From: Stylophora pistillata
Lineage: Eukaryota
Direction of reading: 5' to 3'
DNA length: 64,000 nucleotides
NCBI RefSeq assembly: GCF_002571385.2
Contig: NW_019217861.1
Location: 261,766 to 325,765 of the forward strand
Part shown: positions 14,201-52,171 of the stretch, one piece after another
Layout of the letters: each line of letters opens with the position of its first letter
Numbering within the stretch: position 1 is the first letter of the stretch
The notes under the pieces: model-generated
Told to the model about the DNA's origin: nothing
The model's input: the letters and a program-made list of their open reading frames with translations, nothing else
Database searches by the model: none
Position numbers and translations under genes: made by a program

Positions 14201-15913
14201 TCACGGTCCCTCATTATAAGCAAACTCCTAGGCAAATTAGGACGAAGATTGTGCGACGGACAAGCATACCATCCAGGAATAGCTGCAAAATTCGACCGTA
14301 ACCTTTGGTAGTCATGAACCAATTAACTCGTAAGAGTTAACCTTCGTTTACAAAGCCGTAGATATAGCCTCTTCAAAGCCCTCTTTTCAAAAGAACCATG
14401 TCTTCTAACATAATGAGAGATACTTTCTTCATCTGTAGGAGGCTTGGGTATCAATCTGACGGCCGCCAATGTTGTGATCTTGCACGACGTTGACTTTAAT
14501 CCGTACAACGACAAACAAGCAGAGGATCGGTGTCATCGGGTGGGTCAAACCAGGTACGTAGGGGTAACGGGTAGAGTAATTTCTTGGACCCTTCATTCAT
14601 GGGGCGACATTTGGACTAGAAAATTTCCCTTGAACATATTTGTCCCTTCAACGAAGATGGCGTGCAATAAAGGTGTGGTGCCAGAGTTACAAGAACCTTT
14701 TTTCAGTGGGAATTAAGGTGTGTCTCTTGGATAGAGGTGTCACGGAAGAGAGGAGCTGATAAAGGCATAAAATCAAATGGGATTCACCGCTTCATAAAGT
14801 GACGTTATGTTTACCTAACCAAGCCGGAGAATTTAACAGTACGCTTTTTGTCCGTGTTTACACAATTCTGATCCAATCTGAGTTCAGAACAACTCCGGAT
14901 ATACGGTGTGGTCCGCATGTGAAAGGAATTTAGTTTGAATAAAGCTTGAGTGAGATTAATCTGTTGGACCTGAAATGAACCAGATGAGTTGTCATGTCCT
15001 GTTGAACTGATTGACCATTACTTTAATATTCCCTTGCCTTGTTCTATGTGATTTATTCGACAACATTCTCCCCTCAGGTCTGTGACAGTGTATCGGCTGA
15101 TTGCTAAAAACACTGTAGAGGAAGCGATTCTCCAATGTGCGCAGACCAAGCTTCGACTGGAGCAGGATATGGCCCTAGCTGGTGAGTTAAAATTTTACAC
15201 TTCTATCACTTGGCTCTGACGCTCTTTAAAGCGCAGTTTCGCGTTATTTTGCTTCCTCTTGCTTTTTCTTACCATTATCGTGCAATCTCTGGGGTTCCCC
15301 GTGGGTCTTGCTTCATAAACGTTTTTTTTTTTGTCTTCGGCAAAGTTCGTAACAGGAGTAAAAAAATTAGTGCAAAATAAATATTAATCTCAGCGCGCCG
15401 GAAATCGATATTTTTTCACTGATTTTTTTTTTGTTTTTTTGGTTTTTTTTTTTTTTGGTTTTTGTTTTGACTCGGGTGACGAACTTTACTGGAAAGGAGG
15501 GGCTGCTGGTAGCTTAATTTTTATTTCTTGACTTTTGGTTCGTTTGTTTGTCCAGGTTTAAAAACTGATGCATAATACCTAGTCCACTCCTTTGTAATTT
15601 TCATAAACCACTCCGAAAAATAAATAAATGATAGAACAAAAAGGATAAGAAAGGACAACTTTTGTTGACGTTCTTCGAACCACTAAGATACACGAGGACG
15701 CGGCAAATACAAATGAAATAAATGAAGCGCAAAACTGACAGGAGACCAACTTGTTAGCTTTTGGAAATGTTCATTATCTTGATAAATCCGGCGATAGCTG
15801 CGAAGAACAGTTGCTGATTTCTTGAAACGATATTTCCTTGTTTTTTTTCAGACGATACAAAATCTGCGAAAGATGTGTCAGAACTCCTTAAAGATGTGTT
15901 CAGTTCATCATGA
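2226..15913 (+). CDS. SMARCAD1: SMARCAD1/Fun30/Etl1-family SNF2 chromatin remodeller, 23 coding exons, about 881 aa
   Basis: Phase-consistent GT-AG exons: 2226-2601, 3864-4055, 4994-5056, 5690-5883, 6176-6214, 6443-6556, 6827-6900, 7175-7265, 7357-7456, 7621-7680, 8240-8315, 8586-8721, 9343-9483, 9716-9808, 10377-10494, 11528-11649, 11935-12030, 12626-12718, 13299-13417, 13853-13920, 14439-14553, 15078-15181, 15852-15913 (2646 nt). Motifs: [101 protein letters not shown]. The Fun30-type HhH/SAM-key segment [25 protein letters not shown] is also present. Confidence 0.95.
2837..3048. mobile_element. Short dispersed MITE-like repeat with (TTAA)CCCTT...AAGGG(TTAA)-type ends
   Basis: Related copies or fragments at about 4117-4306, 9500-9650, 11135-11505, 54459-54670 and 62630-62800 share attctcc...agaatttgg...ggagt.aaag.gttaa features. 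Confidence 0.55.
3174..3285. repeat. Palindromic MITE-like repeat
   Basis: attatttgcc...ggtgaatat...aataatctcc pairs with ggagattatt...atattcaccg...ggcgaataat as an imperfect hairpin. Confidence 0.55.
7745..8095. repeat. Degenerate 11-bp minisatellite (acccttcggaa) in SMARCAD1 intron 10
   Basis: About 30 diverged units such as gaaacccttcg gaaactttcg gagacccttt. Confidence 0.8.
9185..9380 (+). repeat. Tandem duplication (about 95 bp) of the intron 12 / exon 13 boundary of SMARCAD1
   Basis: 9185-9277 mirrors 9278-9377, encoding [12 protein letters not shown] versus [13 protein letters not shown]. Confidence 0.85.
10629..10731. repeat. 20-bp tandem repeat (atcaaccggataaaatcgtt) x5
   Basis: Directly visible tandem units. 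Confidence 0.9.
11168..11352. mobile_element. TIR MITE (CAGTGGCGGATC-type ends) nested in another repeat, with internal (GT)n
   Basis: cagtggcagatccaga ... tctagatccgccactg, flanked by accccc / acccct. Confidence 0.75.
12178..12355. mobile_element. Tc1/mariner-pogo (Tigger-like) MITE
   Basis: 23-bp TIR cagtggaacctcgatttaacgaa / ttcgtcaaatctaggttccactg (2 mismatches) with TA on both sides. Confidence 0.85.
14005..14290 (+). mobile_element. Degraded tRNA-head SINE-like repeat containing a ~35-bp direct duplication (about 14140-14218)
   Basis: tggcgatccaatggttagcg head, gtgtccctgggtaggacg...ctctc.cggtgcctctc body, and duplicated gaaaggatggagttaactcacggtccct.attata. Confidence 0.45.
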
Positions 15914-16386
15914 TGCATAAGAGCAATTAATATGTTCGATTAGCATAATGAGTTTGTTAGCAAAAGTTAAATTGAGTATGGTTAAAATTGAATTTGACGA
16001 TTCAAATATCTGGAGAATGCCTTAATCGTAGAATTGTAGTAATAAGACTTGTTTACTCTAAAAATAAGACTATTTTGAACATTAGAAACAGTAGTGCATA
16101 GCATAACTTAGATGCGATCAATCTAGGAAAAAAAACTGTACTTTTGTAAGAGTTTTTTAGCCGTTTTTATTCCTTGGGTTTTTTTGGCTTGTTTCTTTGT
16201 TTGTTTTTTTTCATGAGGCACAATCGAACAGTAAGGGCTTTTCAAAAATTTATTTTATTTACTAAACCGAAAGAAAGTAATTGTGTTCATATATATCATG
16301 GTATTAAATCGCAAGAAAGTGTCATTTATTCGTGTGGTCTTTGGTGTGCAAAAGGTACAAAACCCGTGTTCCATTGTTTAATACTA

Positions 16387-19300
16387 TCAGTGATAGTTGG
16401 TGTTAATATTCCTAAGCGGCTTCTTGCCCTTAACAGATGGCTCAGGAGCTTTTAAGCCAGGAAATTGCGTCGTAATTTCTCCCGTGTCTGTGCTTGCTGT
16501 AACGTTTTTCGTTGGACGGCGTGTTCTAGAGCGAGGCGGTCTATTTCTTGTAAGTTGTACGAGTTGAGGGGTGTACGACTCTAAACAAGCAAACAAAGGG
16601 AAAAAACGACGCGTTACTATTAAGAGGTCGTTATGCTCTCCAATTTTATTGAACTGAAAAAAAATTGGGTTCCATTTTTTTAGAGGAGCTGACTTGGTTT
16701 ATTCATTGACTGAGGTCTGATTGTCTCAAGCACGTGAATAGCCGTTGTCAGTCTAAGAAGTACGTCCAACGGTTAAGCTAAGGACTTTCGCTACAGACGG
16801 TTCTGCAACGGACGGCTTAAAAAAATCAGTTCTCGGTGAATTCCAGCGTGGAAACGACTTGCTTTGATTGCGGTCTTATACACGACGCACTAACGAAACG
16901 CTCTTACTTAACATGCATAACGCTGCACATGCCAGCCTGTTTATACTTACCTAGTCCACTAAAGGAAGAGGGTTTTTCCTCACAGTTCTCTTCTTCCTGT
17001 ATCCATGAACATTGTCTTGTTAACAGTTTTGGGGACGAAAATGTTGCTTCAGCTGTAGCTTGTGTAGACCTAGAACGGACAAAGAAAACCGTTCGTTAGA
17101 AAGTCCACTTTCCATCCCGTTGCCCTTCCGTCATTGAAGGGTAAACAAGTCGTCAGCATCGAGTGCGGGTCAAAACGAGTTTGGTCCCAGTCCCTTTCGT
17201 CAATATCCTGTCAAATGTAAGTACGCGTAACCAAAGATGTTTTATCGTGATGATGTGGTGCAGCGACATTTTTCGCGCATCGTTGCCTGGAGACGACCCA
17301 TAAAGGTCAAACAGCTCTCAAACATCGCTGGTGGTAAAGCCCAGCTGAACATTTCTATCAGCTGTTTTGACTTGTACACCTAAGACACTTTTAAGCTGTA
17401 AGTTTTCGGTTATGTTTCTTGTATTTCTCATTTCTAAATTGTTTCTTTATTTTCTATATTGATTAGTTTACACTAAATGTAAGCCAGGAATTTTACACTG
17501 TTAAGTGTAATATTTAAAATTATTGAAGCCTTTATTTCTTATTTTTCATGAGAAGCTTTGTTCCAACTTTGAATTACATTAAAAAACTCACCCAGAGGCT
17601 TGGCTGTGTTTGGAATCAAACATCTACAGGAACATAAGTAATAAAAACTTGATTGAAATATTGCTTTGCACTTGTCTTGCCATTCTACTAAAAATGTACG
17701 TGTAGAGTAGTAAAATAGGCGGATTATTGAACATTGACTCTGGACAGTGTTAAATGAAGCCAAATCATGGTATCATCCTATCCTCTAGTCCAAGGATCAA
17801 GGAGATGTGGAATGCTTTATACACTGTTAGCAGGTTTTCTGTATTGTGGTTTTTCTCACCTATATATCAAACAACAAGCCACTGCGCCCCAACGTTAACT
17901 ACTCGGCAACTAGCCTGCAGAACAGACGTAGTTTTTTTGGCGTTTCTTAGTCGAACGGATGCGAACACAAGGGGAGTACAAAGTGCGAGTCACGTGCGAG
18001 GTGATAGGAGAAAAAAAATCTAACTTTCGCGCTCCTCCTCAAGCGCGCGACTCGTGCTTGCCTCGCGTTTGCTTCCGTTCCCCTGAAAACGGGAAAACTG
18101 AAACTACGCCTGTTCTTCAGCCTACTTGGCGACCGGTTCATGGATCAAGATGAAACGCGAATGCGTTCTACGGCAATTGTATCAAAATGTGCAGCACACA
18201 CTTGGAAAGGCTGTGCAATCTTCAATAAAAACTCTCAATTAGCTACAATAATGGCATACCTCAATCGGTTTGTCGAGAGAAAACTGTGCTGTGCTTAGGT
18301 CCAGAGATTTCACTCTTAGCCTGCCGCTTTCGCAAGCTCTAATTCCAGTGCTACAATGTATGATATCAAAAGTAAAACCTATTAATTAACTGATGAGAAC
18401 TGCTTACAAAGGAAAAGCAAAAAGGGGTTTATTTAATGTTCTGCCTGGAATGAATATTTATACTTACTAATTCTTATTTTTTTTTATTTATTTCTTATTT
18501 TTTTGTTGTTATTGCGGCAAGTTTCCTCATATGACGTTATCTAGGGAAAACAAACTCTTACATGCAAAAATTGGATCTTTGGACCTTTTGGCAGAAAAGA
18601 TCAGAACAGAAGAAACCAAGAAAATTTTATTAGGACACCATTACGGCAAAGAGCACTCTTAATCAGCCGACATTTTAACAAGTGCTACATGTCTGTTTTA
18701 TTGCTATGATTACCCATTGGATTATAAGCTCGACTATTGTAATTGTTTTGACGTAAACTTACTTTTTTCCCAGAACTTGACTAAAAGACACTGGTGTTTT
18801 TTAATGATATACACCTGTCTTACTGGCTACCAAGGAATAGATAGCTAGCTAGTAGCCTAGCCAATTAGATTGCAGCATTTGTGGTAAAACTCGATTGATA
18901 TCAACTTGCAAAGGATACGACGGACGTAAAATTTAAAATTTTTTGAAAATTGCTATTTGTAGCTCTTAAAAACTGTAAATTATATTGACTTACCGAGGGG
19001 TCTGGTTTTGCTTTGAATTAAATCTCTACGGGAAAGTATTAAAAAAATGAAAATTACATCTATGCAACGAAAAGTTCTCCAGATATACCAGAAGACCGAG
19101 TTGGTTGTATATAAGCCAGGGAAGAATAACTAAAGTACTGCTTAAATTGTTATTTTGGCTTTTAAATCGATGAAGTTCATCGGCTAACTGCGTTTGTTGA
19201 TATAGGATAATTCCATGGAAAGTGTATATGAACGATTTTTATTCACGAGTTACCCGCATCAAAAAAACGAACGAGTAACTGCAGCAAACGAGAGAGGCTG

Positions 19301-20991
19301 TTGATGCATTGTAACGAGTGGGTAAATATCGTTCAAGCACTTTCCGTGGTATGATGTTTTTATTTTTACTGTTTAGTTTTAGCAAAACAAAAACCTATTA
19401 GGACTTAGTCCCTCGCGGTTTTCCTCGATTTAGGCAGTTCGGTTGATTTTGCTTTGAGTTCTCATTGGCTCTCAAATGTATTTTCCTCTTACTACTTTGG
19501 TTTTGGTCTTAAGACACTCGAGTCGAAAAGATCACTATCTCAAATCTTGTTTTATGTGCATTATGCGTCTTTGTTGCGAGCAAGTGGCTGCATTTACACT
19601 TTGCTTGTCATGAGAAATTAAAACAGTGATGGCAAAAAGTACCCTAAATAATGAGGACATACCTCAATCGGTTTGTCGAGAGAAAAATGAGCTCTGCCTA
19701 CGTCGATTGACTTCGATCTTCTACTACTTTCTTCTCCAGAGCTACAAGAGAATGAAATAAAGGTCGTATCGATGTTATAAGTCAATGAATGACGAGGGGG
19801 GGAGTTTCTAAAAAACTGTGGTGTTGCGTCAGCGGGAGAATATAAAAAGTAATTTGACGAAGGACTAACGCTGGAAACGTCAGCTTGAAAACTCTTTACG
19901 GTGGCTAATTTACACTCTCAACTCAGTTAATCAATCCAAATTATGAAAATTCATTACTTGACGAGGGAATTCCGCATTAAATTGCACGCGAAAACCGATA
20001 AGTTTGAATGCTTTTGACTGTTAAAATAATATTTTTTTGTAATCAACAGGTGGATCACGGGCGCCCCAGCCTTTTCTCTCCTACCAGCTTCGCCATCGGT
20101 CTCTCGCCGACCAAATTTATTAATGTCTTCTGCTACACTATCGAGGAGACCTGAAAAAATGTCGGAAACCTGTGTTGAACTAGACAGGCAGGGAAATTAT
20201 ACTTGTACTATAGATTACAGATTAAATGAACTTGAAAACTCAGCCGGTGAGAAATAGAGACCAGTCAACTGCTGGGTAAGATATTTTTCATTCCTACATA
20301 AAAGTGACTGAAAAAAAAAAAAAAAAAACAGGCAAGTTGCTAAGTCTTTCGGTCATTCTGATGTAGGAGACCTGGTGGTCGGAGCACCTGACCTTACTCT
20401 TCTGTTCCGGAAATCATGGTCTTTCGCAGTTCTCATAAATGTCGTAGTTTGTGGATTGGTAGAAAATCATAAGGTCGAATAAGTCGTGCTATTGCAACGG
20501 ATGTTCCCTAAACTTTAATATGCGATAAATAGAGGGCTATATTGTAACAACATCGTAGAATTACTTCATTTCCATTCCAGACTTGCTCACTGAGTTCAGG
20601 GCATTTCCACGCATGGAATATAACCTTACCTGAAGGCTTGACTTTGTTTCGAGCGATACTCCTTGAAAAAGAACAAGATTCAATCATACATTGTGTGTAC
20701 GATCTACATGATCTAAATTCCTTAAACTGCAGTCCTAGGTTAATATTATTTATCATTGAAGCCCCGGTCATACATAAGTTTAGTTTAGCAACAAGTCAAT
20801 GTAACTCAACAGAGAGACTGTGTTTGTAGTGAAATGATAAACTGAACTGAACGTTGTACCGAACGTAAAACCATGGAGTGGGCATGCCGTAAGCCTTTAG
20901 TTAGACTTACCTCAATTGGTTTGTCCAGGGAAAAATCCGTCTTGCCTATGTCAAACGATTTCTCTCTCCCCATTTTGTTTTCTCGGGACAT
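16387..20991 (-). CDS. Unnamed 219-aa low-complexity protein: three tandem FSLDKPIE repeats plus a C-terminal CPI-like motif, 8 exons
   Basis: Exons 5' to 3': 20991-20911, 20661-20630, 19741-19663, 19025-18994, 18350-18260, 17623-17592, 17069-16951, 16580-16387. All are GT-AG, phases close (0,2,0,2,0,2,1), total 660 nt, no internal stop. Protein: MSRENKMGREKSFDIGKTDFSLDKPIE EYRSKQSQAFS SGEESSRRSKSIDVGRAHFSLDKPIE RFNSKQNQTPR TGIRACESGRLRVKSLDLSTAQFSLDKPIE MFDSKHSQASG STQATAEATFSSPKLLTRQCSWIQEEENCEEKPSSFSGLE SYTPQLVQLTRNRPPRSRTRRPTKNVTASTDTGEITTQFPGLKAPEPSVKGKKPLRNINTNYH. Differences within FSLDKPIE are all synonymous. Confidence 0.8.
17910..18124. mobile_element. TIR MITE in an intron of the hidden gene
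   Basis: Imperfect inverted ends tagcctgcagaacagacgtagttt ... aaactacgcctgttcttcagccta. Confidence 0.7.
19200..19365. repeat. Palindromic dispersed repeat (same family as 45122-45277)
   Basis: ccatggaaagtg...aacgattttt attcacgagtt ... aacgagtgggtaaatatcgttcaagcactttccgtgg. Confidence 0.7.
19790..19943 (+). mobile_element. Short Penelope-derived non-coding repeat
   Basis: gacgaaggactaacgctggaaacgtcagct...ctttacggtggctaattta matches the 3' non-coding end of the Penelope copy at 35880-35950. Relatives at about 6590-6680 (-), 47375-47435 and 58221-58350. Confidence 0.6.
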
Positions 20992-21039
20992 ATCACTAGA
21001 CGTACAAGCTTTCTAGTCCATAGCGAGTTCGGCTACATT

Positions 21040-21090
21040 GTTTCTTTTATGACGTACTTGATTTCGTCATAATGGCTGCGCGTGCACTCT
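21040..21090 (-). promoter_or_regulatory. Candidate core promoter of the hidden CPI gene
   Basis: The minus strand reads gcgcagccattatgacgaaatcaagtacgtcataaaag (CRE half-sites and TATA-like cataaaag) about 50-90 nt upstream of the ATG, with no polypyrimidine acceptor. Confidence 0.3.
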
Positions 21091-24000
21091 GTTCATCGCT
21101 GTCAAAAAGTGAAACCCGACATGAAGGTCATTAACAACAACGACGAAAATTTGTTTATTCATAGAAATTGTAAGTCATCATTTAGATAGGCCATGGCAAT
21201 GGCCAAGGGCAAAAGGCAAAAGACAATAGGCAAAGTGTTATGCAACAGCACAGTGTTGTCAAACCAGTATATTTATGTCGGTAACTTACGCTTTTTTGCT
21301 CGTACGTTCTCTTAACTACTTTTATTTCTGTGTTCGGCGACCTATATATCCAAAGTCTGTTTATAATAACTAAACAATGGCCGCCAATAAGAAAGCATGA
21401 TCACAATCTTTTAGTTATGGGGAATTTGAATGATAATTTCTCGCTATGCCTCCAACTGAAGGAAAATTAACTTTTCTCTTGGTCGGTCAGTTAAGGCGCG
21501 GGTATGGCGCACGCACGACCGGTTCATCGTGGGGTTCGCACTGACTTATGGGATATGCACACGGGAAACACTTCGCAGAAACAGCAGGGTGCGATAAATC
21601 CATTTACGAGAAGGAATAGCTTTATTGCAAACTACGTATGAATTTCGAAAGTAGACCAACAGCAAAAAAAGATTTGTACAGTGGTATCTGTTGCTATTTG
21701 AAACCGTGTAGCTCTAAATTTGACTCTTTTAATCTTTTTCGGATTTTCCTCCATTTCAAATTACTAGGAATTCAGAGATTAAGATTTTTATTTCTCTAAT
21801 CTTGGGAGCCATTAATTTTTTTTATCTAAACAGACTATGAACATATAGGTCACTGGTCCTTTTTAATTTTCGTACTAGTGAGGAGACTCACTCTATTTAA
21901 ACGTAGCAGTCCATACCATTTTGTGGCTAGTGGACTGAATCGTAACTTTGAGTCGTTTGACTTTCTCGTGATTATTGAAAGAAAGCAACCCCATAAAAAT
22001 TCATGGAAACTCAATAGCTGTCCAGAGGATGGATTAATATGCATTTTTTATTTACTTAAGCCCAGTATTAGTCTCTACGCTGGACGTTTCAATCCTCTTA
22101 TTACTAATGTCTTATCGTCTATCGTCCTCCATTACTTACCAAACGATCCTTAAAAATATCAAGTGTTTGTATAAATTATTACCTCTGCGCTATAACCACT
22201 AAAGAAACAATCTTCAAAACATAATTTTACAAGTTTTACCAGTCTTTATCACGGAAATCTGACATACATTGGTCTTTTTATCCGCTCCATTTTCCTATGG
22301 AGATTTTGCACTGGTGTGGGCAAAGCAGGTTTTGCCAACTGCTCTGTTTATTTTGTCACATGGTAGGAATTTCATAATGGCAAATGGAAAAAAAAGCACT
22401 AAATGTGTTTGGTGGTTATGGAACAAATGTCCTTTGCAACCGCGGAAACTCTATCATTTTAAGAATCCCTCTGTTAAGGCGTCCGGCACGAAACCAAGAT
22501 ATCCGGCGCATTCTGGGTGCTTCGTACGTTTGAATAAGTCAGGAAGCAGAAGGCCTAACTAATTATAATTAGCTCGGCCGCTCAGATAAATAGAAATTTG
22601 CTTTTATGTTGTTGGGAGTGCTGACGGGAAAGGGACTAATTTTTCATTCCCGAGATATCCGGGACAATAGCCTTGACGTCAACACGAGTTTTGTTTCAGT
22701 TTACCGCCTGCGGCGATAACACGTTTTATTTATACGTTTTCCCGGTCAACAAGAGGCGTATCTGGCGGTTGTTTGTCCTTCAGAACAAAGCTGCAAGCGG
22801 TTAGCGCGCAAAGGTAAGCAGAATTAACATCTGACATTAGATAATACAAAACCAACTGTTCTGCCTCTCCATGTAATGAATGAGCGCACTAGCTGTGCGA
22901 AACAGGAAGAGATGAATCAGTGTTAAAGTTCGTATTTACAATTCAGTTGACTTCGAACCGAATATAGCATATTTATGTTTTCGCCGTAGAGTCTTTTTTA
23001 GTCTCTAAGAGTGCGAAATATTTGGCATTACCAGTGAAGTTTAGCGAGTGAACATCGAGCAATCCGGCTTTAATGTTGAAATGTTCGTTTTCTCTCGTAA
23101 TTTTCGCTGAGGCCGGTTCCTTTAAGTGTGGTATTTACGATGGATTAAGTCATGATGCAGAGAACTTTCGTCGTTGAAGATTAGACTCCTTGAATTGCAC
23201 GCTTGCATGTTCGTTTCTTGAGAATTGCACCCATGCATCAGAATATTAATTGCTCATTGATTACAAAGTCATACACGCATCCCTTAACAGACTTACGAAA
23301 AGATGAGCTTATTCAATTTTATGTAGGAGTATTTATTTTATCTTTGAAGTAGCTAGACACTAATATCAAAGCAAAACCACTGCATTTTTAAGCAATGTGC
23401 ATTCAATGAAATCCTTATCTCGGAATTTGTTCTGGACCAATTTTGACTCATTGTTACTCGAATTTGTTCCACGTGCATTCAAGATGTCATCGCATACAAT
23501 AAATTTCGGAAAATATTTGTCACTAGTGTCGGTTTCATGCATCGGTTTATTTTCTTTAGCATTACGGGGGCATAGGAACAGGATTATAACAATTTTATCG
23601 AAAAAATCCTGGAAAAACTCAAATCCTCTTATAATAATTCGCAAGTGATGCTGATGTTTTGGCTCAGAGTATTGACCATAAGGTCGTGACCTGGGCCATG
23701 CCACCCGCGCATCAGAGACGGAAAACTGGTACGACAAACTCGCCTGATTCACATCCGGTTAAAAGAAATTAAGTCATATCCGGTCGCAAAATGATGGCGG
23801 TGACAACGCGAACATTGGTCCGATTTAACAATATCTTTCGCTCAATTGTGAAGTGAAATGGCTGAATGCGGGTGATGTATTGATTTCACGTTCAATAAAA
23901 TACTGGCATTTGTTCTGTTCCGAAAATTAAAATCTTCCTCGCGCTTAGCTCTATAAAAACTAGCATTCGGATCTTCTTCTCCTATCCTCCGTTGCCCAGT

Positions 24001-34900: not shown

Positions 34901-37633
34901 GACCAACCAGGCACTTTTAAATGCACTCGTGCACGATGCAAAACGTGTCCTTTCATTCATAACACTGAGAAAATATCGGGACCCAAACGATCTATTAAGA
35001 TCACCAATCACTTCACATGCACCTCCGCCAATGTAATNNNNNNNNNNNNNNNNNNNNNNNNNNNNNNNNNNNNNNNNNNNNNNNNNNNNNNNNNNNNNNN
35101 NNNNNNNNNNNNNNNNNNNNNNNNNNNNNNNNNNNNNNNNNNNNNNNNNNNNNNNNNNNNNNNNNNNNNNNNNNNNNNNNNNNNNNNNNNNNNNNNNNNN
35201 NNNNNNNNNNNNNNNNNNNNNNNNNNNNNNNNNNNNNNNNNNNNNNNNNNNNNNNNNNNNNNNNNNNNNNNNNNNNNNNNNNNNNNNNNNNNNNNNNNNN
35301 NNNNNNNNNNNNNNNNNNNNNNNNNNNNNNNNNNNNNNNNNNNNNNNNNNNNNNNNNNNNNNNNNNNNNNNNNNNNNNNNNNNNNNNNNNNNNNNNNNNN
35401 NNNNNNNNNNNNNNNNNNNNNNNNNNNNNNNNNNNNNNNNNNNNNNNNNNNNNNNNNNNNNNNNNNNNNNNNNNNNNNNNNNNNNNNNNNNNNNNNNNNN
35501 NNNNNNNNNNNNNNNNNNNNNNNNNNNNNNNNNNNNNNNNNNNNNNNNNNNNNNNNNNNNNNNNNNNNNNNNNNNNNNNNNNNNNNNNNNNNNNNNNNNN
35601 NNNNNNNNNNNNNNNNNNNNNNNNNNNNNNNTACCGAATCATTCTAAGCAACATATGGCAATCTGCGGTCTTTCCTTACACTTAGGTAGCACGGAAAGCC
35701 GCAAAACTCTTGAACAAAGGCTCATCTTTCAAACCGGCACTCTAAATCCCACAGGTATCAACGAACGCTTTTCATTCCACTAAATTATTCGAGTTTTTCT
35801 CGTTGCCATGTTCCCACCAATCACGTAGCTCCATTTTCTGCCTTTAAAGCCACACACAACCCACAATTCCTCTATTCGCTCCGACGAAGGGCTAACGCTT
35901 TTATAATCGTAACGGTGGCCAATATACCATTTCAACTTTGTTGATATATTCAAATTATTACACCATGTAAGCTTTTAGATTTTAGATCTACAGAGATCGC
36001 TATCAGATTCCCTCTAATTAAGCCAAAGAGGACTCATCGGTTCGCCTAGGCTATATGCTAGGGTTCACAAGCTATCTCAAATATAGTTGATAATGAATCA
36101 TCTATCATGGTGGTTGCTTGTTCTTACTCGGGGTACCAAAGCGATCCCTAAAACACCAAAAATGTGACTTAATCATGGCTCTGAGCGTAAGGACAACAAA
36201 TCAGTAATTCGTAAATCCAAGAAGCTCATGGGAACTCAAATCTCCCTACCTAAGGGCTATTCTCAACTCGTTGAAGGATTAAACAGATAATGACTAAAGT
36301 GGCTAACATCTTGGGGAAGTATCTTCGAAAATCTCCTGCCCTTTTTCCGGAGTAATACTTTACAACCTATAGAGGCTGTACTCTAACGCTCAAATACTTA
36401 ACTTTATTAATTAAGAGGGATCACGCTGAGAGATTGATTCTGCCGAATGCCTTTGGTAATCCTGGTTGATTTATGTCTAGATCTTTCCCATTTTGGAAGT
36501 CCTCGGAGTGTCTAGAAATACCCAATGCTGCATTACGGATATGTATTCAAGTGGACATCCCACGCAGCTTTTATCCGCTTTTCACCATTCATTTCTGCAA
36601 CATGCGAAGTATAAGTAACATTACTTCCGGGAGACTAGATTCCGTCAGTGTTAAAACAACTTGAAAACTTTGGAATAAGCCCTCAGTTTTAGCTCTTATA
36701 CCTTCTCAACTTATGATCCGTCTACTCCTGAATTATGAATTTACTCTTTTCCTTTTTGTTCAAACGTGACTTGTGTAGGGTGCTAGGAGTGACTTGACGA
36801 AGCACCTTCAGGATAATTCCGAGGAACATTTACAATTAGCTTTGGAAGTGATCAGAGAACAGAGAACTGAAATGGGAATACAGCGAGGCCGACTGAGGAA
36901 ACAGGAGGACAATATAAATCAGCTGATGGAAAGTGTCGCCAAACTGACAGCACTGTGTGAAGAAACACTAAAAAATAATGCCGACCAGGAAAAAACAATC
37001 AATCGATTGTCTGAACAGTTAAAAGAGCAGAAAAAGCATCAATCTAAACACGAGAAAGAGTTGAAGCAGAGAATGGCCGAGTTAGAGAACCGCGAGTTAG
37101 AAATGCCCCACAACGGATTAGCTCGTTCTCCGAGACTTGACGGTTACGGAGAACTTGTTTGGCGAGTTTCGAACTTCTCCCGAAGATTGCAACGCGTCCA
37201 GTCGGGTCGCTGCGACGACCCGATGACCAGCGAGTCCTTCTATACTTCGGCATTCGGTTACAAGATCGTCGTATGGGCCTACATCAATGGCAGAGGCAAA
37301 GAAACTGGGCATTGCTTGTCTTTGTACGCCTGCGTCTTGTGTGGAGAGTATGACGCAGTACTTTCCTGGCCGATCAAACCTCGATACACATTTTCATTGT
37401 TAGATCAAAATCCAAATCCTGAGGCGAGAAAGGATTTAACGCGCACACGCAAAGTTCATGACTTCAAACGTGATGACGTCAGAAGAAAGGGAATTGATCG
37501 GCCTGGTCGAGATGAGAGAGCCATCATCGTTGGATTTGACGATTTTGTTAGACACGATGAACTCGAGGCTGGTAACTTTTTAGCTGATGATACTTTATTT
37601 GTTCGCATTCTTGTCGACATTCCTGAATCTTGA
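25963..37633 (+). CDS. TNF receptor-associated factor (TRAF4-like) lacking a RING domain, 5 coding exons, about 431 aa
   Basis: Phase-0 exons 25963-26148, 28584-28682, 31512-31589, 33748-33825, 36779-37633. TRAF zinc fingers CKFC...H..VC, CPNMC...H...EC and CLYHDIGC...H...H are followed by a coiled coil and a MATH domain (GELVWRVSNF...SESFYTSAFGYK...INGRGKETGHCLSLY...GEYDAVLSWP...LLDQ...GFDDFV...FLADDTLFVRI). Confidence 0.88.
27713..28206. mobile_element. 494-bp non-autonomous DNA transposon with GAG termini
   Basis: 17-bp TIR gagcctctctataggta / tacccatagagaggctc (1 mismatch), flanking duplication aatgat, reiterated subterminal tcttcg. Confidence 0.85.
28735..29278. repeat. Old tandem duplication (about 240-300 bp units) in TRAF intron 2
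   Basis: The blocks tgtca.tctcattcaagg, ctcttttca.ggaac.ttttctctaatc and taatctaattg.aaac...agacatgact...ggtcaatat each occur twice in the same order. Confidence 0.75.
34553..35957 (+). mobile_element. Penelope-like retroelement, 5'-truncated (GIY-YIG region), spanning an N-gap
   Basis: LVRS...PGTFKCTRARCKTCPFIHN...GPK...ITNHFTCTSANV before the gap and PNHSKQHMAICGLSLH.GSTESRKTLEQRLIFQTGTLNPTGINERFSF after it. Candidate TSD ttacaccatgt at 34542-34552 and 35958-35968. Confidence 0.9.
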
Positions 37634-47629: not shown

Positions 47630-49690
47630 TACTGCACGAGATACTAACGTACGAATCCAGCGTTAGAGAATTCAAAAAGTGCGCGAGTACTGAAGTAATA
47701 ATTCAAAGTACGATAATCCCAGAAAATACACGAGATACTAAAGTAACAATCCAAAGTAAGATGATCCGGAAAATGTGCGAGATACTATTGTAACAATCGA
47801 ATGTAAGATAATCCGAAAATGCGCGAGATACTAACGTAACAATGCAACGCAAGATACTACCTAAAAGTGGGCGATATGCTAACCTAACAATCCAGGGTAA
47901 GATAATCCTAAAGATGCGCGAGATATTAACGTAACGATGTACGTTAACGTAGCTAAGTTAGTCCAATGGAAGGGAATCCTTAGAATGCGCGAAATGGTAA
48001 GGTACCAATCCAATGTAAGATAGTCCTTAAAAAGCACGAGATAATAAGATTACTATCCTCTATAAGATAACCCTAAAAATGCGCAGGGTGTTAACGCATC
48101 AATCAAATATGAAATAATATAAATAGAGCGCGAAATATTATTGTAACCGTCCAATGTAAGATAATCCAAAAAGTGCGCGAGACACTGAAGGTACAATCCA
48201 GAGTTAGATAATCACAGAAGATGCGCGAGATAATGACGTACAAATCCAAAGTAAGATGATCCAAATAATGCCCGACATACTATTGCAACAATCGAATGTA
48301 AGGTAATTCAACAAAATGCGCGAGATACTGACGTAAAAATGCAATGTAAAATAATCAAAAAAGCATGCGATATCCTAACCTAAACATCCAATGTTATTTA
48401 ATCTTTCTTAAATGCACGGGAGACCTATGGGCGAAAATCAAACGTATTATTCAAATAAAATTTTATCCTAAAAGTGCGCGAGATACTTACGTAAATTCCA
48501 ATTTAAGATAATACTGAAAATGCGTGAGAAACTAATGCAAAAATTGAATACTAGATAATCCATTGTGCGCGAGAGACTAACGTTAGATTTGAATGCAATG
48601 TAATTCAAAAACTGCGCGAGATACCAACCTAACAATCAAATGTAAGACAATCCAAACTATGCACGATGTAGTTACGTAACAGTCCAATTTAAGATAATGC
48701 AAAAAGAACGGAAGATACTATTGTAACAATTCAAAGTTAGATAATCCTAAAAGTGCGCCACATACATNNNNNNNNNNNNNNNNNNNNNNNNNNNNNNNNN
48801 NNNNNNNNNNNNNNNNNNNNNNNNNNNNNNNNNNNNNNNNNNNNNNNNNNNNNNNNNNNNNNNNNNNNNNNNNNNNNNNNNNNNNNNNNNNNNNNNNNNN
48901 NNNNNNNNNNNNNNNNNNNNNNNNNNNNNNNNNNNNNNNNNNNNNNNNNNNNNNNNNNNNNNNNNNNNNNNNNNNNNNNNNNNNNNNNNNNNNNNNNNNN
49001 NNNNNNNNNNNNNNNNNNNNNNNNNNNNNNNNNNNNNNNNNNNNNNNNNNNNNNNNNNNNNNNNNNNNNNNNNNNNNNNNNNNNNNNNNNNNNNNNNNNN
49101 NNNNNNNNNNNNNNNNNNNNNNNNNNNNNNNNNNNNNNNNNNNNNNNNNNNNNNNNNNNNNNNNNNNNNNNNNNNNNNNNNNNNNNNNNNNNNNNNNNNN
49201 NNNNNNNNNNNNNNNNNNNNNNNNNNNNNNNNNNNNNNNNNNNNNNNNNNNNNNNNNNNNNNNNNNNNNNNNNNNNNNNNNNNNNNNNNNNNNNGTAACA
49301 ATCGAATGTAAGATAATCCTAAAAGTGCACGAGATATTAACGTAACAATCGAATGTAAGATAATCATAAAAGTGCGCGAGATATTAACGTAACAGTCGAA
49401 TGTAAGATAATCCTAAAAGTGCGCGAGATATTAACGTAACAATCGAATGTAAGATGGTCTTAAAAGTGTGCGAGATATTAACGTAACAATCGAATGTAAG
49501 ATAATCCTAAAAGTGTGCGAGATATTAACGTAACAAACGAATGTAAGATAATCCAAAGGTACACGAGACGTTAATGTAACAATCGAATGCAAGATAATTC
49601 TAAAAGTGCGCGAGATATCAATGTAATAATCGAATGTAAGATAATCCTAAAAGTGCGCGAAAAACCAACGTAACAGTGGAACGCGAGAGA
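47630..49690. repeat. 47-bp satellite array spanning an N-gap
   Basis: Unit gagatattaacgtaacaatcgaatgtaagataatcctaaaagtgcgc, period 47 (e.g. 49331 to 49378). Confidence 0.95.
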
Positions 49691-52112: not shown

Positions 52113-52171
52113 NNNNNNNNNNNNNNNNNNNNNAAAAAACAAAACAAAAAACTACTACTACTAATAATAAT
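52069..52171. repeat. (AAT)n microsatellite with a short N-gap
   Basis: Directly visible. Confidence 0.9.

What the first reader, a model, noticed from the sequence alone, without database searches (positions are those of the whole stretch)
16387..20991. Hidden micro-exon gene: three FSLDKPIE exon-pair repeats ending in a capping-protein-interaction-like motif
Seen: a 60-bp motif recurs at about 18260, 19663 and 20911, each ending at a minus-strand GT donor and each followed by an exon of exactly 32 nt. Splicing 8 exons gives a stop-free 219-aa ORF. The FSLDKPIE core differs only at synonymous sites (tcc/tct, ctg/ctc, cca/ccg), as do KS (aaa tcg / aag tca / aaa tct) and SK, which indicates selection on protein sequence. 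The last exon encodes LVQLTRNRPPRSRTRRPT. Established: CPI motifs of CARMIL, CD2AP/CIN85, CKIP-1, CapZIP and FAM21 follow LxHxTxxRPK-x6-P with an essential Arg. Inference: a small disordered multivalent adaptor that binds actin capping protein. I recognise no known family with this architecture.
Basis: partly seen in the sequence, partly recalled or inferred. Interest (0 to 1): 0.88.

Follow-up and report, generated by a model that had tools for sequence, protein, structure and literature searches.

The report
Annotated coral repeat protein, capping-motif-like tail
The eight-exon gene is real and expressed, but it is already in GenBank as an uncharacterised Stylophora pistillata protein found only in pocilloporid corals; its tail resembles the peptide that other proteins use to bind actin capping protein, and that function is plausible but unproven.

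Summary
On the minus strand, 20991-16387, eight GT-AG exons give a 219-aa ORF. It contains three exon-pair repeats: an exon ending in FSLDKPIE, then a 32-nt exon.

The gene is not hidden. The spliced model is identical to GenBank PFX28719.1 (SpisGene6552, Stylophora pistillata). RefSeq XP_022785582.1 is a 178-aa isoform that lacks the middle exon pair. Transcript-derived ORFs from public RNA assemblies carry all eight exons joined.

Orthologues with two or three repeats exist in Pocillopora. I found no relative outside Pocilloporidae and no Pfam family at threshold. The AlphaFold2 model has low confidence throughout (mean pLDDT 51), as expected for a disordered protein.

The tail, LVQLTRNRPPRSRTRRP, matches 5 of 7 consensus positions of the CPI motif. 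It sits in register with the CPI segment of Pfam CARMIL_C and with the coral's own CARMIL. All seven of its residues at the consensus positions are conserved between the two genera, with one exception in one sequence. Against this:
- The Pfam scores are below the cut-off, and Pocillopora orthologues give no hit.
- The His and Lys of the consensus are Gln and Pro here.
- Sequence searches of the PDB found nothing.

I put binding to capping protein at about 0.4. The partner of the FSLDKPIE repeats is unknown. The scan separately noted another CPI-like motif (myosin IX) in this same window.

The parts
20911..20991 (-). Coding exon 1 (81 nt, phase 0), ATG at 20991. Encodes MSRENKMGREKSFDIGKTDFSLDKPIE. 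Repeat 1, A-exon.
   Evidence: identical to P0009 residues 1-27
20630..20661 (-). Exon 2, 32-nt micro-exon (EYRSKQSQAF-). Repeat 1, B-exon.
19663..19741 (-). Exon 3 (79 nt), ends in FSLDKPIE. Repeat 2, A-exon.
18994..19025 (-). Exon 4, 32-nt micro-exon (RFNSKQNQTP-). Repeat 2, B-exon. First half of the in-frame 123-nt cassette that the RefSeq isoform lacks.
18260..18350 (-). Exon 5 (91 nt), ends in FSLDKPIE. Repeat 3, A-exon. Second half of the skipped cassette. Carries the V88A and D101E population variants.
   Evidence: (variants at 18312 and 18272)
17592..17623 (-). Exon 6, 32-nt micro-exon (MFDSKHSQAS-). Repeat 3, B-exon.
16951..17069 (-). Exon 7 (119 nt), acidic linker with the conserved SWIxEExNxEE and SSFSGL.
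16387..16580 (-). Coding part of exon 8 with the stop (TGA 16389-16387). The longest exon, 67% identical to Pocillopora (42 of 63; only the 10-residue exon 2 is higher, 9 of 10). Single copy in the genome.
16513..16563 (-). CPI-like motif L162-P178, LVQLTRNRPPRSRTRRP.
   Evidence: consensus taken from PMC5491179
16325..16330 (-). AATAAA, the likely poly(A) signal. A poly(A)-library contig ends at 16319.
   Evidence: X2 record 9; inference

Best explanation
This is a real, transcribed protein-coding gene restricted to pocilloporid corals (Stylophora pistillata SpisGene6552 / LOC111325928). It encodes a small intrinsically disordered protein of 219 aa, or 178 aa when the middle exon pair is skipped. 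Shown: three tandem modules of 37-41 aa, each encoded by an exon pair (...[RK]xKS-hydrophobic-D...F[ST]LDKPIE, then x[FY]xSKxxQ), arose by exon-pair duplication before Stylophora and Pocillopora split, and they are kept by purifying selection. Inferred: the C-terminal exon carries a divergent capping-protein-interaction (CPI) motif, LVQLTRNRPPRSRTRRP. This motif would wrap in extended form around the stalk of the CapZ alpha/beta heterodimer, as the CARMIL, CD2AP, CKIP-1, FAM21 and CapZIP motifs do. That would recruit capping protein and/or allosterically tune its barbed-end capping. Also inferred: the two or three FSLDKPIE modules dock the protein on a still unknown partner, and alternative splicing sets their number. 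I rate the gene and its architecture as near certain (about 0.95). The confidence given below is for the capping-protein mechanism.
For: Gene: the spliced model equals GenBank PFX28719.1. RefSeq XP_022785582.1 equals exons 1, 2, 3, 6, 7 and 8. Four transcript-derived 213-aa ORFs lie on 9 Logan contigs of at most 3.2 kb and carry all 8 exons joined; they differ from the window only by missense changes. Pocillopora orthologues with 3 repeats (P0005, P0013) and 2 repeats (P0006) keep the frame. pN/pS between repeats is about 0.3 and the introns cannot be aligned. The AF2 model has mean pLDDT 51 and pTM 0.12.

CPI: the motif has 5 of the 7 consensus residues of LxHxTxxRPK(x6)P (consensus from PMC5491179), plus the central RxR that PMC9282853 reports in CPI motifs. 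Pfam CARMIL_C aligns the motif to profile positions 202-227. The coral's own CARMIL places its CPI, LENLTKSRPRSPRRRSP, at those same positions, with Asn in place of the consensus His. All 7 consensus positions are invariant in 8 pocilloporid sequences except one P17S, while positions 4, 11, 12, 14 and 15 vary. Shuffles of the exon reproduce the same five positions in 0.08% of trials. Published CPI motifs tolerate large divergence (PMC6249002), and Samd14 binds with 3 of 7. CapZ alpha and beta genes are present in the genome.
Against: The CARMIL_C scores (12.3 bits for the exon, 16.0-22.9 for the whole Stylophora proteins) are below the 25-bit cut-off. The three Pocillopora orthologues give no CARMIL_C hit at E<=10. 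CAP-ZIP_m gives no hit. Searches against PDB chains by sequence and by profile found nothing relevant; I did not check that CPI peptides were among the chains searched. BLASTP against the coral CARMIL CPI region is not significant. Consensus His3 is Gln here. Consensus Lys10 is Pro in all sequences, and this position appears to correspond to K987, one of the two residues whose mutation abolishes CARMIL1 binding (that mapping is my inference). Any 5-of-7 match arises in 0.3-0.5% of composition-matched shuffles, so a proteome-wide scan should yield some chance matches. No binding model or experiment was possible.
Confidence: 0.4

Rival explanations
1. Same real gene and disordered repeat protein, but the CPI resemblance is coincidental. 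The conserved basic, proline-rich tail (TRNRPP..R.RR, GKKPLRN) would then serve another purpose, such as nuclear or nucleolar targeting, nucleic-acid or acidic-surface binding, or a kinase/phosphatase docking site. The protein would be a lineage-specific scaffold or substrate unrelated to actin capping.
For: All profile and pairwise tests for CPI families are sub-threshold or negative. Two of the seven consensus residues are missing, including the Lys. Composition-matched shuffles give any 5-of-7 match at 0.3-0.5%, so chance matches are expected across a proteome. The same reader flagged a second CPI-like motif in this 64-kb window, which suggests a liberal eye for this pattern. The repeats carry a basophilic-kinase-type site, RxKS-hydrophobic-D, in most copies.
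Against: The match is in register with Pfam's CPI segment and with the coral's own CARMIL. Between the two genera, variation falls on the x positions and spares the consensus positions. The specific five-position match is rare even at this composition (8e-4).
Confidence: 0.5
2. The FSLDKPIE modules are degenerate beta-thymosin/WH2-type G-actin-binding repeats (DKP...IExFDxSK recalls the thymosin N-terminus). The protein would then bind both actin monomers and capping protein.
For: The repeat length (37-41 aa) is close to that of a thymosin repeat. DKP, FD and SK are shared with the coral's own thymosin repeats. AF2 puts a short helix right after KP in repeat 1.
Against: There is no Pfam Thymosin or WH2 hit at E<=10. 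A genome-wide six-frame Thymosin search found 14 repeats elsewhere and none at this locus. An HMM built from six coral thymosin repeats gives no hit at all on the 219-aa protein with filters off. The LKK[TV] motif is absent.
Confidence: 0.05
3. It is not a functional coding gene: a spurious ORF, or non-coding RNA with chance splice sites.
For: The four runs laid on the locus showed no spliced joints. Their contigs and reads were colinear with the genome across introns 6 and 7, and coverage was thin.
Against: Spliced ORFs occur in 9 transcript contigs and in 2 independent annotations. The frame and exon phases are kept in three Pocillopora species. pN is well below pS between repeats. Population variants are all missense, with no stops or frameshifts.
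Confidence: 0.03

Closest known systems
CPI-motif proteins as a functional class (CARMIL, CD2AP/CIN85, CKIP-1, CapZIP, FAM21/WASHCAP, twinfilin tail, Bsp1, Samd14)
   Same: A ~17-residue basic, proline-rich linear motif in a disordered region: L-x-x-x-T-x-x-R-P...RxR...P. It is otherwise unrelated to the other members, as those families are to each other.
   Different: Gln replaces His3 and Pro replaces Lys10. The protein is very small (178/219 aa) and has no folded targeting domain (no PH, SH3, LRR or ADF-H). It is restricted to one coral family. Binding is untested.
CARMIL C-terminus (Pfam PF16000), including the coral's own CARMIL (G000:C784, L004)
   Same: It is the only Pfam family with any signal. 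The motif aligns to profile positions 202-227, where the coral CARMIL has LENLTKSRPRSPRRRSP.
   Different: Scores are below the gathering cut-off. There is no LRR, PH or HD region and no CSI motif (RxDEGxEEFFxKR). BLASTP against the coral CARMIL region finds no significant similarity.
CapZIP / FAM21 (Pfam CAP-ZIP_m, PF15255)
   Same: A disordered protein with an ...RRP[PT] ending to the motif. The coral FAM21 has VRAKVQVKRRPPTRQARR.
   Different: No CAP-ZIP_m hit at E<=10. No LFa repeats.
Multi-repeat beta-thymosin proteins (thypedin- or ciboulot-like; the coral gene at G000:C113:554944-564139)
   Same: Tandem repeats of ~38 aa, an actin-regulation theme, and the short DKP / FD / SK strings.
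   Different: Thymosin repeats there match as single stretches, apparently one per exon, not an exon pair. LKK[TV] is absent here. Profile tests are negative.

Membership tests
CPI-motif proteins | 17-residue consensus LxHxTxxRPK(x6)P | tested here: inconclusive
   5 of 7 positions match (L162, T166, R169, P170, P178). His is Gln and Lys is Pro. The coral's own CARMIL also lacks the His (Asn). Samd14 binds with 3 of 7.
CPI-motif proteins | Central basic R/K-x-R/K required for binding | tested here: met
   R172-S-R174 and R174-T-R176 are present. R174 and R177 are kept in all 8 sequences and R176 in 7 of 8 (His in P0006); R172 is Pro in Pocillopora. The requirement is taken from PMC9282853.
CPI-motif proteins | Motif lies in an intrinsically disordered segment | tested here: met
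   AF2 gives block-mean pLDDT of about 47-53 over model residues 147-216 (P0004 141-210) and no secondary structure there.
CPI-motif proteins | Direct binding to the stalk of the CapZ alpha/beta heterodimer | not testable with these tools
   The coral CapZ genes are split into many exons of ~30-50 aa, so no full-length chain could be given by reference. The complex prediction was not run.
CARMIL (PF16000 CARMIL_C) | Score at or above the Pfam gathering cut-off (25 bits) | tested here: not met
   12.3 bits (exon 8) and 16.0-22.9 bits (Stylophora proteins). No hit in three Pocillopora orthologues.
CARMIL | PH-LRR-HD architecture and the CSI motif RxDEGxEEFFxKR | tested here: not met
   The protein is 219 aa with no other Pfam domain. 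No CSI-like string follows the motif.
CapZIP/FAM21 (PF15255 CAP-ZIP_m) | Profile match | tested here: not met
   Not listed at E<=10 for any of 9 proteins. The same profile finds the coral FAM21 at 29.3 bits.
Beta-thymosin / WH2 repeats (PF01290) | Profile match and the LKK[TV] motif | tested here: not met

The most novel reading that the evidence does not exclude
A gene born within Pocilloporidae encodes a minimal capping-protein adaptor. It has a divergent CPI motif (Gln3, Pro10) fused to two or three FSLDKPIE docking modules, and skipping of an in-frame exon pair sets their number in both Stylophora and Pocillopora. It would be the smallest CPI protein known and an example of a CPI motif arising de novo in a young disordered gene.
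Probability: 0.3. Interest if true: 0.6.

Novelty: new member of a known kind. Interest (0 to 1): 0.4.

Why it matters
If the tail binds capping protein, this would add a coral-specific, domain-free member to the CPI-motif class. It would show that the motif can arise in a young disordered gene, and it would give a compact natural tool for studying the regulation of actin capping in a reef-building coral. The splicing-controlled repeat number would be a neat case of tunable valency. If the tail does not bind, this is an ordinary lineage-restricted disordered protein that is already annotated as hypothetical.

Tried and rejected
1. RNA reads. Four runs were laid on 16200-21300 and none of the seven junctions was listed.
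   - The contigs of X1 and X2 are colinear with the genome across introns, for example X2 at 16319-17531.
   - X24 raw reads cover only 16200-17396, introns included, with all first mates on the minus strand. They run beyond 16200.
   - Under the usual dUTP convention this would be plus-strand read-through from the convergent helicase gene (stop at 15914). Under the other convention it would be unspliced pre-mRNA.
   - Deep coverage at 19791-20132 belongs to an interspersed repeat.
I could not fetch the transcript contigs or the Pocillopora nucleotides, so no between-species dN/dS was computed.
3. PDB searches by sequence and by profile found nothing relevant. The ESM Atlas gave no usable hit. 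Rfam found nothing in 15500-21500.
4. The beta-thymosin/WH2 idea was rejected. For one search I copied six 32-34-aa coral repeat peptides from the output into the script.
5. BLASTP of exon 8 against the coral CARMIL CPI region was not significant.
7. The joined model was never sent to a search tool as letters. Searches went exon by exon by reference. After that, they used database ids that turned out to be the same protein (P0001, P0004, P0009). The joined translation was built only inside scripts, for comparison.
8. A bacterial promoter scan is irrelevant for a coral.
9. By eye I considered known short motifs: PP1 RVxF, B56 LxxIxE, calcineurin, the clathrin box, TRAF2/6, LC8 TQT, LIR and SH3 ligands. 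None fits all three repeats.
10. No paper in the library mentions LOC111325928, SpisGene6552, PFX28719, A0A2B4SHX8 or LOC131793770.
Full report
**What is there**

Reading the minus strand of 16200-21200 and checking with a script gives eight exons:

| Exon | Coordinates | Length (nt) |
|---|---|---|
| 1 | 20991-20911 | 81 |
| 2 | 20661-20630 | 32 |
| 3 | 19741-19663 | 79 |
| 4 | 19025-18994 | 32 |
| 5 | 18350-18260 | 91 |
| 6 | 17623-17592 | 32 |
| 7 | 17069-16951 | 119 |
| 8 | 16580-16387 | 194, including the TGA |

- All seven introns are GT..AG with pyrimidine tracts.
- The joined ORF is 660 nt, 219 aa.
- An in-frame TAG lies at 21015-21013, upstream of the ATG.
- Exons 1, 3 and 5 each end with FSLDKPIE in phase 0. 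Each is followed by a 32-nt exon encoding x[FY]xSKxxQ.

**Is it a gene?**

A full HMMER scan of 1.84 billion representative proteins with the last exon (63 aa, by reference) found only two clusters.

- One is RefSeq XP_022785582.1, 'uncharacterized protein LOC111325928 [Stylophora pistillata]'. It has 178 aa and equals exons 1, 2, 3, 6, 7 and 8.
- A word-indexed search with that protein then found a 213-aa ORF from Logan run assemblies.
- That ORF's 90% cluster holds GenBank PFX28719.1, 'hypothetical protein AWC38_SpisGene6552' (UniProt A0A2B4SHX8), 219 aa.
- A script shows that PFX28719.1 is identical to the spliced window model.

So the organism is Stylophora pistillata, and the gene is already annotated in both its 3-repeat and 2-repeat forms. 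It is not hidden.

Four distinct 213-aa ORFs (P0004, P0010-P0012) sit on nine Logan contigs of 1.6-3.2 kb. The genomic span is 4.6 kb, so these contigs must be spliced cDNA that carries all seven junctions. They differ from the window only by six missense sites in total: R75G, V88A, D101E, F126C, P129L/E156D and T186I. Two of these (V88A, D101E) were also seen as variants at 18312 and 18272 in the reads laid on the locus.

**Direct read evidence was weak**

The one read-laying run showed no spliced joints.

- Contigs from the metatranscriptome and poly(A) runs were colinear with the genome across introns.
- The two raw-read runs, of which only 2-6% was sampled, covered just 16200-17396. That stretch includes introns 7 and 6. 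Every first mate lay on the minus strand, and the reads ran past 16200.
- A convergent plus-strand SNF2-type helicase gene ends at 15914. This signal may therefore be its read-through rather than pre-mRNA of the gene under study. I could not resolve this.
- The deep coverage at 19791-20132 is an interspersed repeat with about 2000 candidate copies.

**Evolution**

- Pocillopora has clear orthologues. P. meandrina CAH3120902.1 (218 aa) and a 216-aa Logan ORF have three repeats. P. verrucosa XP_058967232 (181 aa) has two.
- Identity to Stylophora is about 61-63%. Exon 8 (42 of 63) and exon 2 (9 of 10) are the most conserved.
- Each repeat is closer to its counterpart in the other genus than to its neighbours. 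The triplication therefore predates the split.
- Both the 2-repeat and the 3-repeat forms occur in both genera. This points to conserved skipping of the in-frame 123-nt exon pair 4+5 (inference).
- Between the paralogous repeats, similarity is confined to the exons. pS is 0.26-0.65 (0.55-0.65 for repeat 1 against repeats 2 and 3) against pN of 0.16-0.18. The FSLDKPIE core shows 3 synonymous and 0 non-synonymous changes.
- No homologue was found outside Pocilloporidae by single-sequence, profile or full-library searches.
- No Pfam family reaches threshold, and the ESM Atlas gave nothing.
- AlphaFold2 on the four-sequence alignment gives mean pLDDT 51 and pTM 0.12, with one short helix. This is what a disordered protein looks like.

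**The capping-protein idea: evidence for**

The published consensus is LxHxTxxRPK(x6)P (PMC5491179). Residues 162-178, LVQLTRNRPPRSRTRRP, match L1, T5, R8, P9 and P17. They contain the central RxR that PMC9282853 reports in CPI motifs. Gln stands at position 3 and Pro at position 10.

- Pfam CARMIL_C is the only family with any signal. It aligns exon-8 residues 4-29 to profile positions 202-227 (E=0.13, 12.3 bits).
- Whole Stylophora proteins score 16.0-22.9 bits (E down to 7.5e-5), always ending at profile position 227.
- To see what those positions mean, I searched the coral's own genome with PF16000. Its CARMIL matches positions 157-227, and the sequence there ends in LENLTKSRPRSPRRRSP. That is a CPI motif with Asn in place of His, in exact register with ours (L1, L4, T5, R8, P9, R13, R15 and P17 shared).
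- Across eight pocilloporid sequences, all seven consensus positions are invariant apart from one P17S. Positions 4, 11, 12, 14 and 15 vary.
- Shuffles of the exon reproduce the same five positions in 0.08% of trials, and any 5 of 7 in 0.5%.
- The literature says the motif tolerates much divergence (PMC6249002). Samd14 binds with 3 of 7.

**The capping-protein idea: evidence against**

- Every profile score is under the 25-bit cut-off.
- The three Pocillopora orthologues give no CARMIL_C hit.
- CAP-ZIP_m gives no hit, although it finds the coral FAM21.
- PDB sequence and profile searches found nothing relevant. BLASTP against the coral CARMIL region is not significant.
- If K987 is the consensus Lys (my inference from the motif's numbering), then position 10, Pro in our protein, corresponds to one of the two residues whose mutation abolishes CARMIL1 binding.
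- From the amino-acid frequencies and the shuffle rates, I estimate on the order of one chance match of this quality per proteome (inference).

I therefore rate capping-protein binding at about 0.4.

A complex prediction would have been the best in-silico test. It could not be run, because the coral CapZ alpha and beta genes are split into many small exons. No full-length chain could be supplied by reference.

**The repeats**

- I found no known short linear motif that fits all three FSLDKPIE modules.
- A resemblance to the beta-thymosin N-terminus (DKP...FDxSK, ~38-aa repeats) was tested and rejected. Pfam Thymosin finds 14 repeats elsewhere in the genome and none here. An HMM of six coral thymosin repeats gives no hit on the protein even with filters off.
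- Most copies carry an RxKS-hydrophobic-D string, a basophilic-kinase-type site. It is not conserved in Pocillopora repeat 3 of P0005 (S to P; kept in P. meandrina P0013).

**Comparison and verdict**

If the function holds, the protein works like a CPI-motif protein. It is not a member of the CARMIL, CapZIP/FAM21 or thymosin families. It is a lineage-restricted, annotated but uncharacterised disordered protein. The scan's operators' index shows a second CPI-like claim (myosin IX tail) in this same window. I did not test that one.

- The joined model was never sent to a search tool as typed letters. Searches went exon by exon by reference, and then through public protein ids.
- N runs in the window were left alone.

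Noticed in passing
window 14439-14555, 15078-15181, 15851-15914 (+): The last three coding exons of a plus-strand SNF2-type helicase (Helicase_C, E=8.8e-8). From memory, the sequence resembles the SMARCAD1 C-terminus. Its stop is at 15912-15914, convergent with the repeat gene and about 470 nt from that gene's stop.
   Followed up: partly
window 19855-19945 (within 19791-20132, intron 2): A ~90-bp interspersed repeat with about 2000 candidate copies in the genome, often in close inverted pairs (MITE-like). It has very deep RNA coverage, many loose ends and an opposite-strand joint at 19964/20000.
   Followed up: partly
window 16200-17531: An unspliced RNA signal runs across introns 7 and 6 of the repeat gene: a colinear 1213-nt poly(A)-library contig and stranded reads with all first mates on the minus strand. 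It may be plus-strand read-through of the helicase gene or retained-intron pre-mRNA.
   Followed up: partly
window 21037-21058 (-): The palindrome ATGACG-N10-CGTCAT (two CRE/ATF-like half sites) is followed by CATAAAAG about 50 nt upstream of the ATG. This is a possible core promoter. I read it by eye only.
   Followed up: no
G000:C113:554944-564139 (-), loci L017-L021: At least 13 beta-thymosin repeats in one 9-kb stretch, apparently one per exon. This looks like a thypedin-like multi-thymosin gene. A single-repeat thymosin lies at G000:C752:42765-42857.
   Followed up: partly
L004:1690-1740 (G000:C784): The coral CARMIL's CPI motif reads LENLTKSRPRSPRRRSP, with Asn in place of the consensus His, and I saw no clear CSI motif downstream.
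   Followed up: partly
window 35038-35631, 48768-49294, 52113-52133, 40891: Runs of N (assembly gaps or masking).
   Followed up: no
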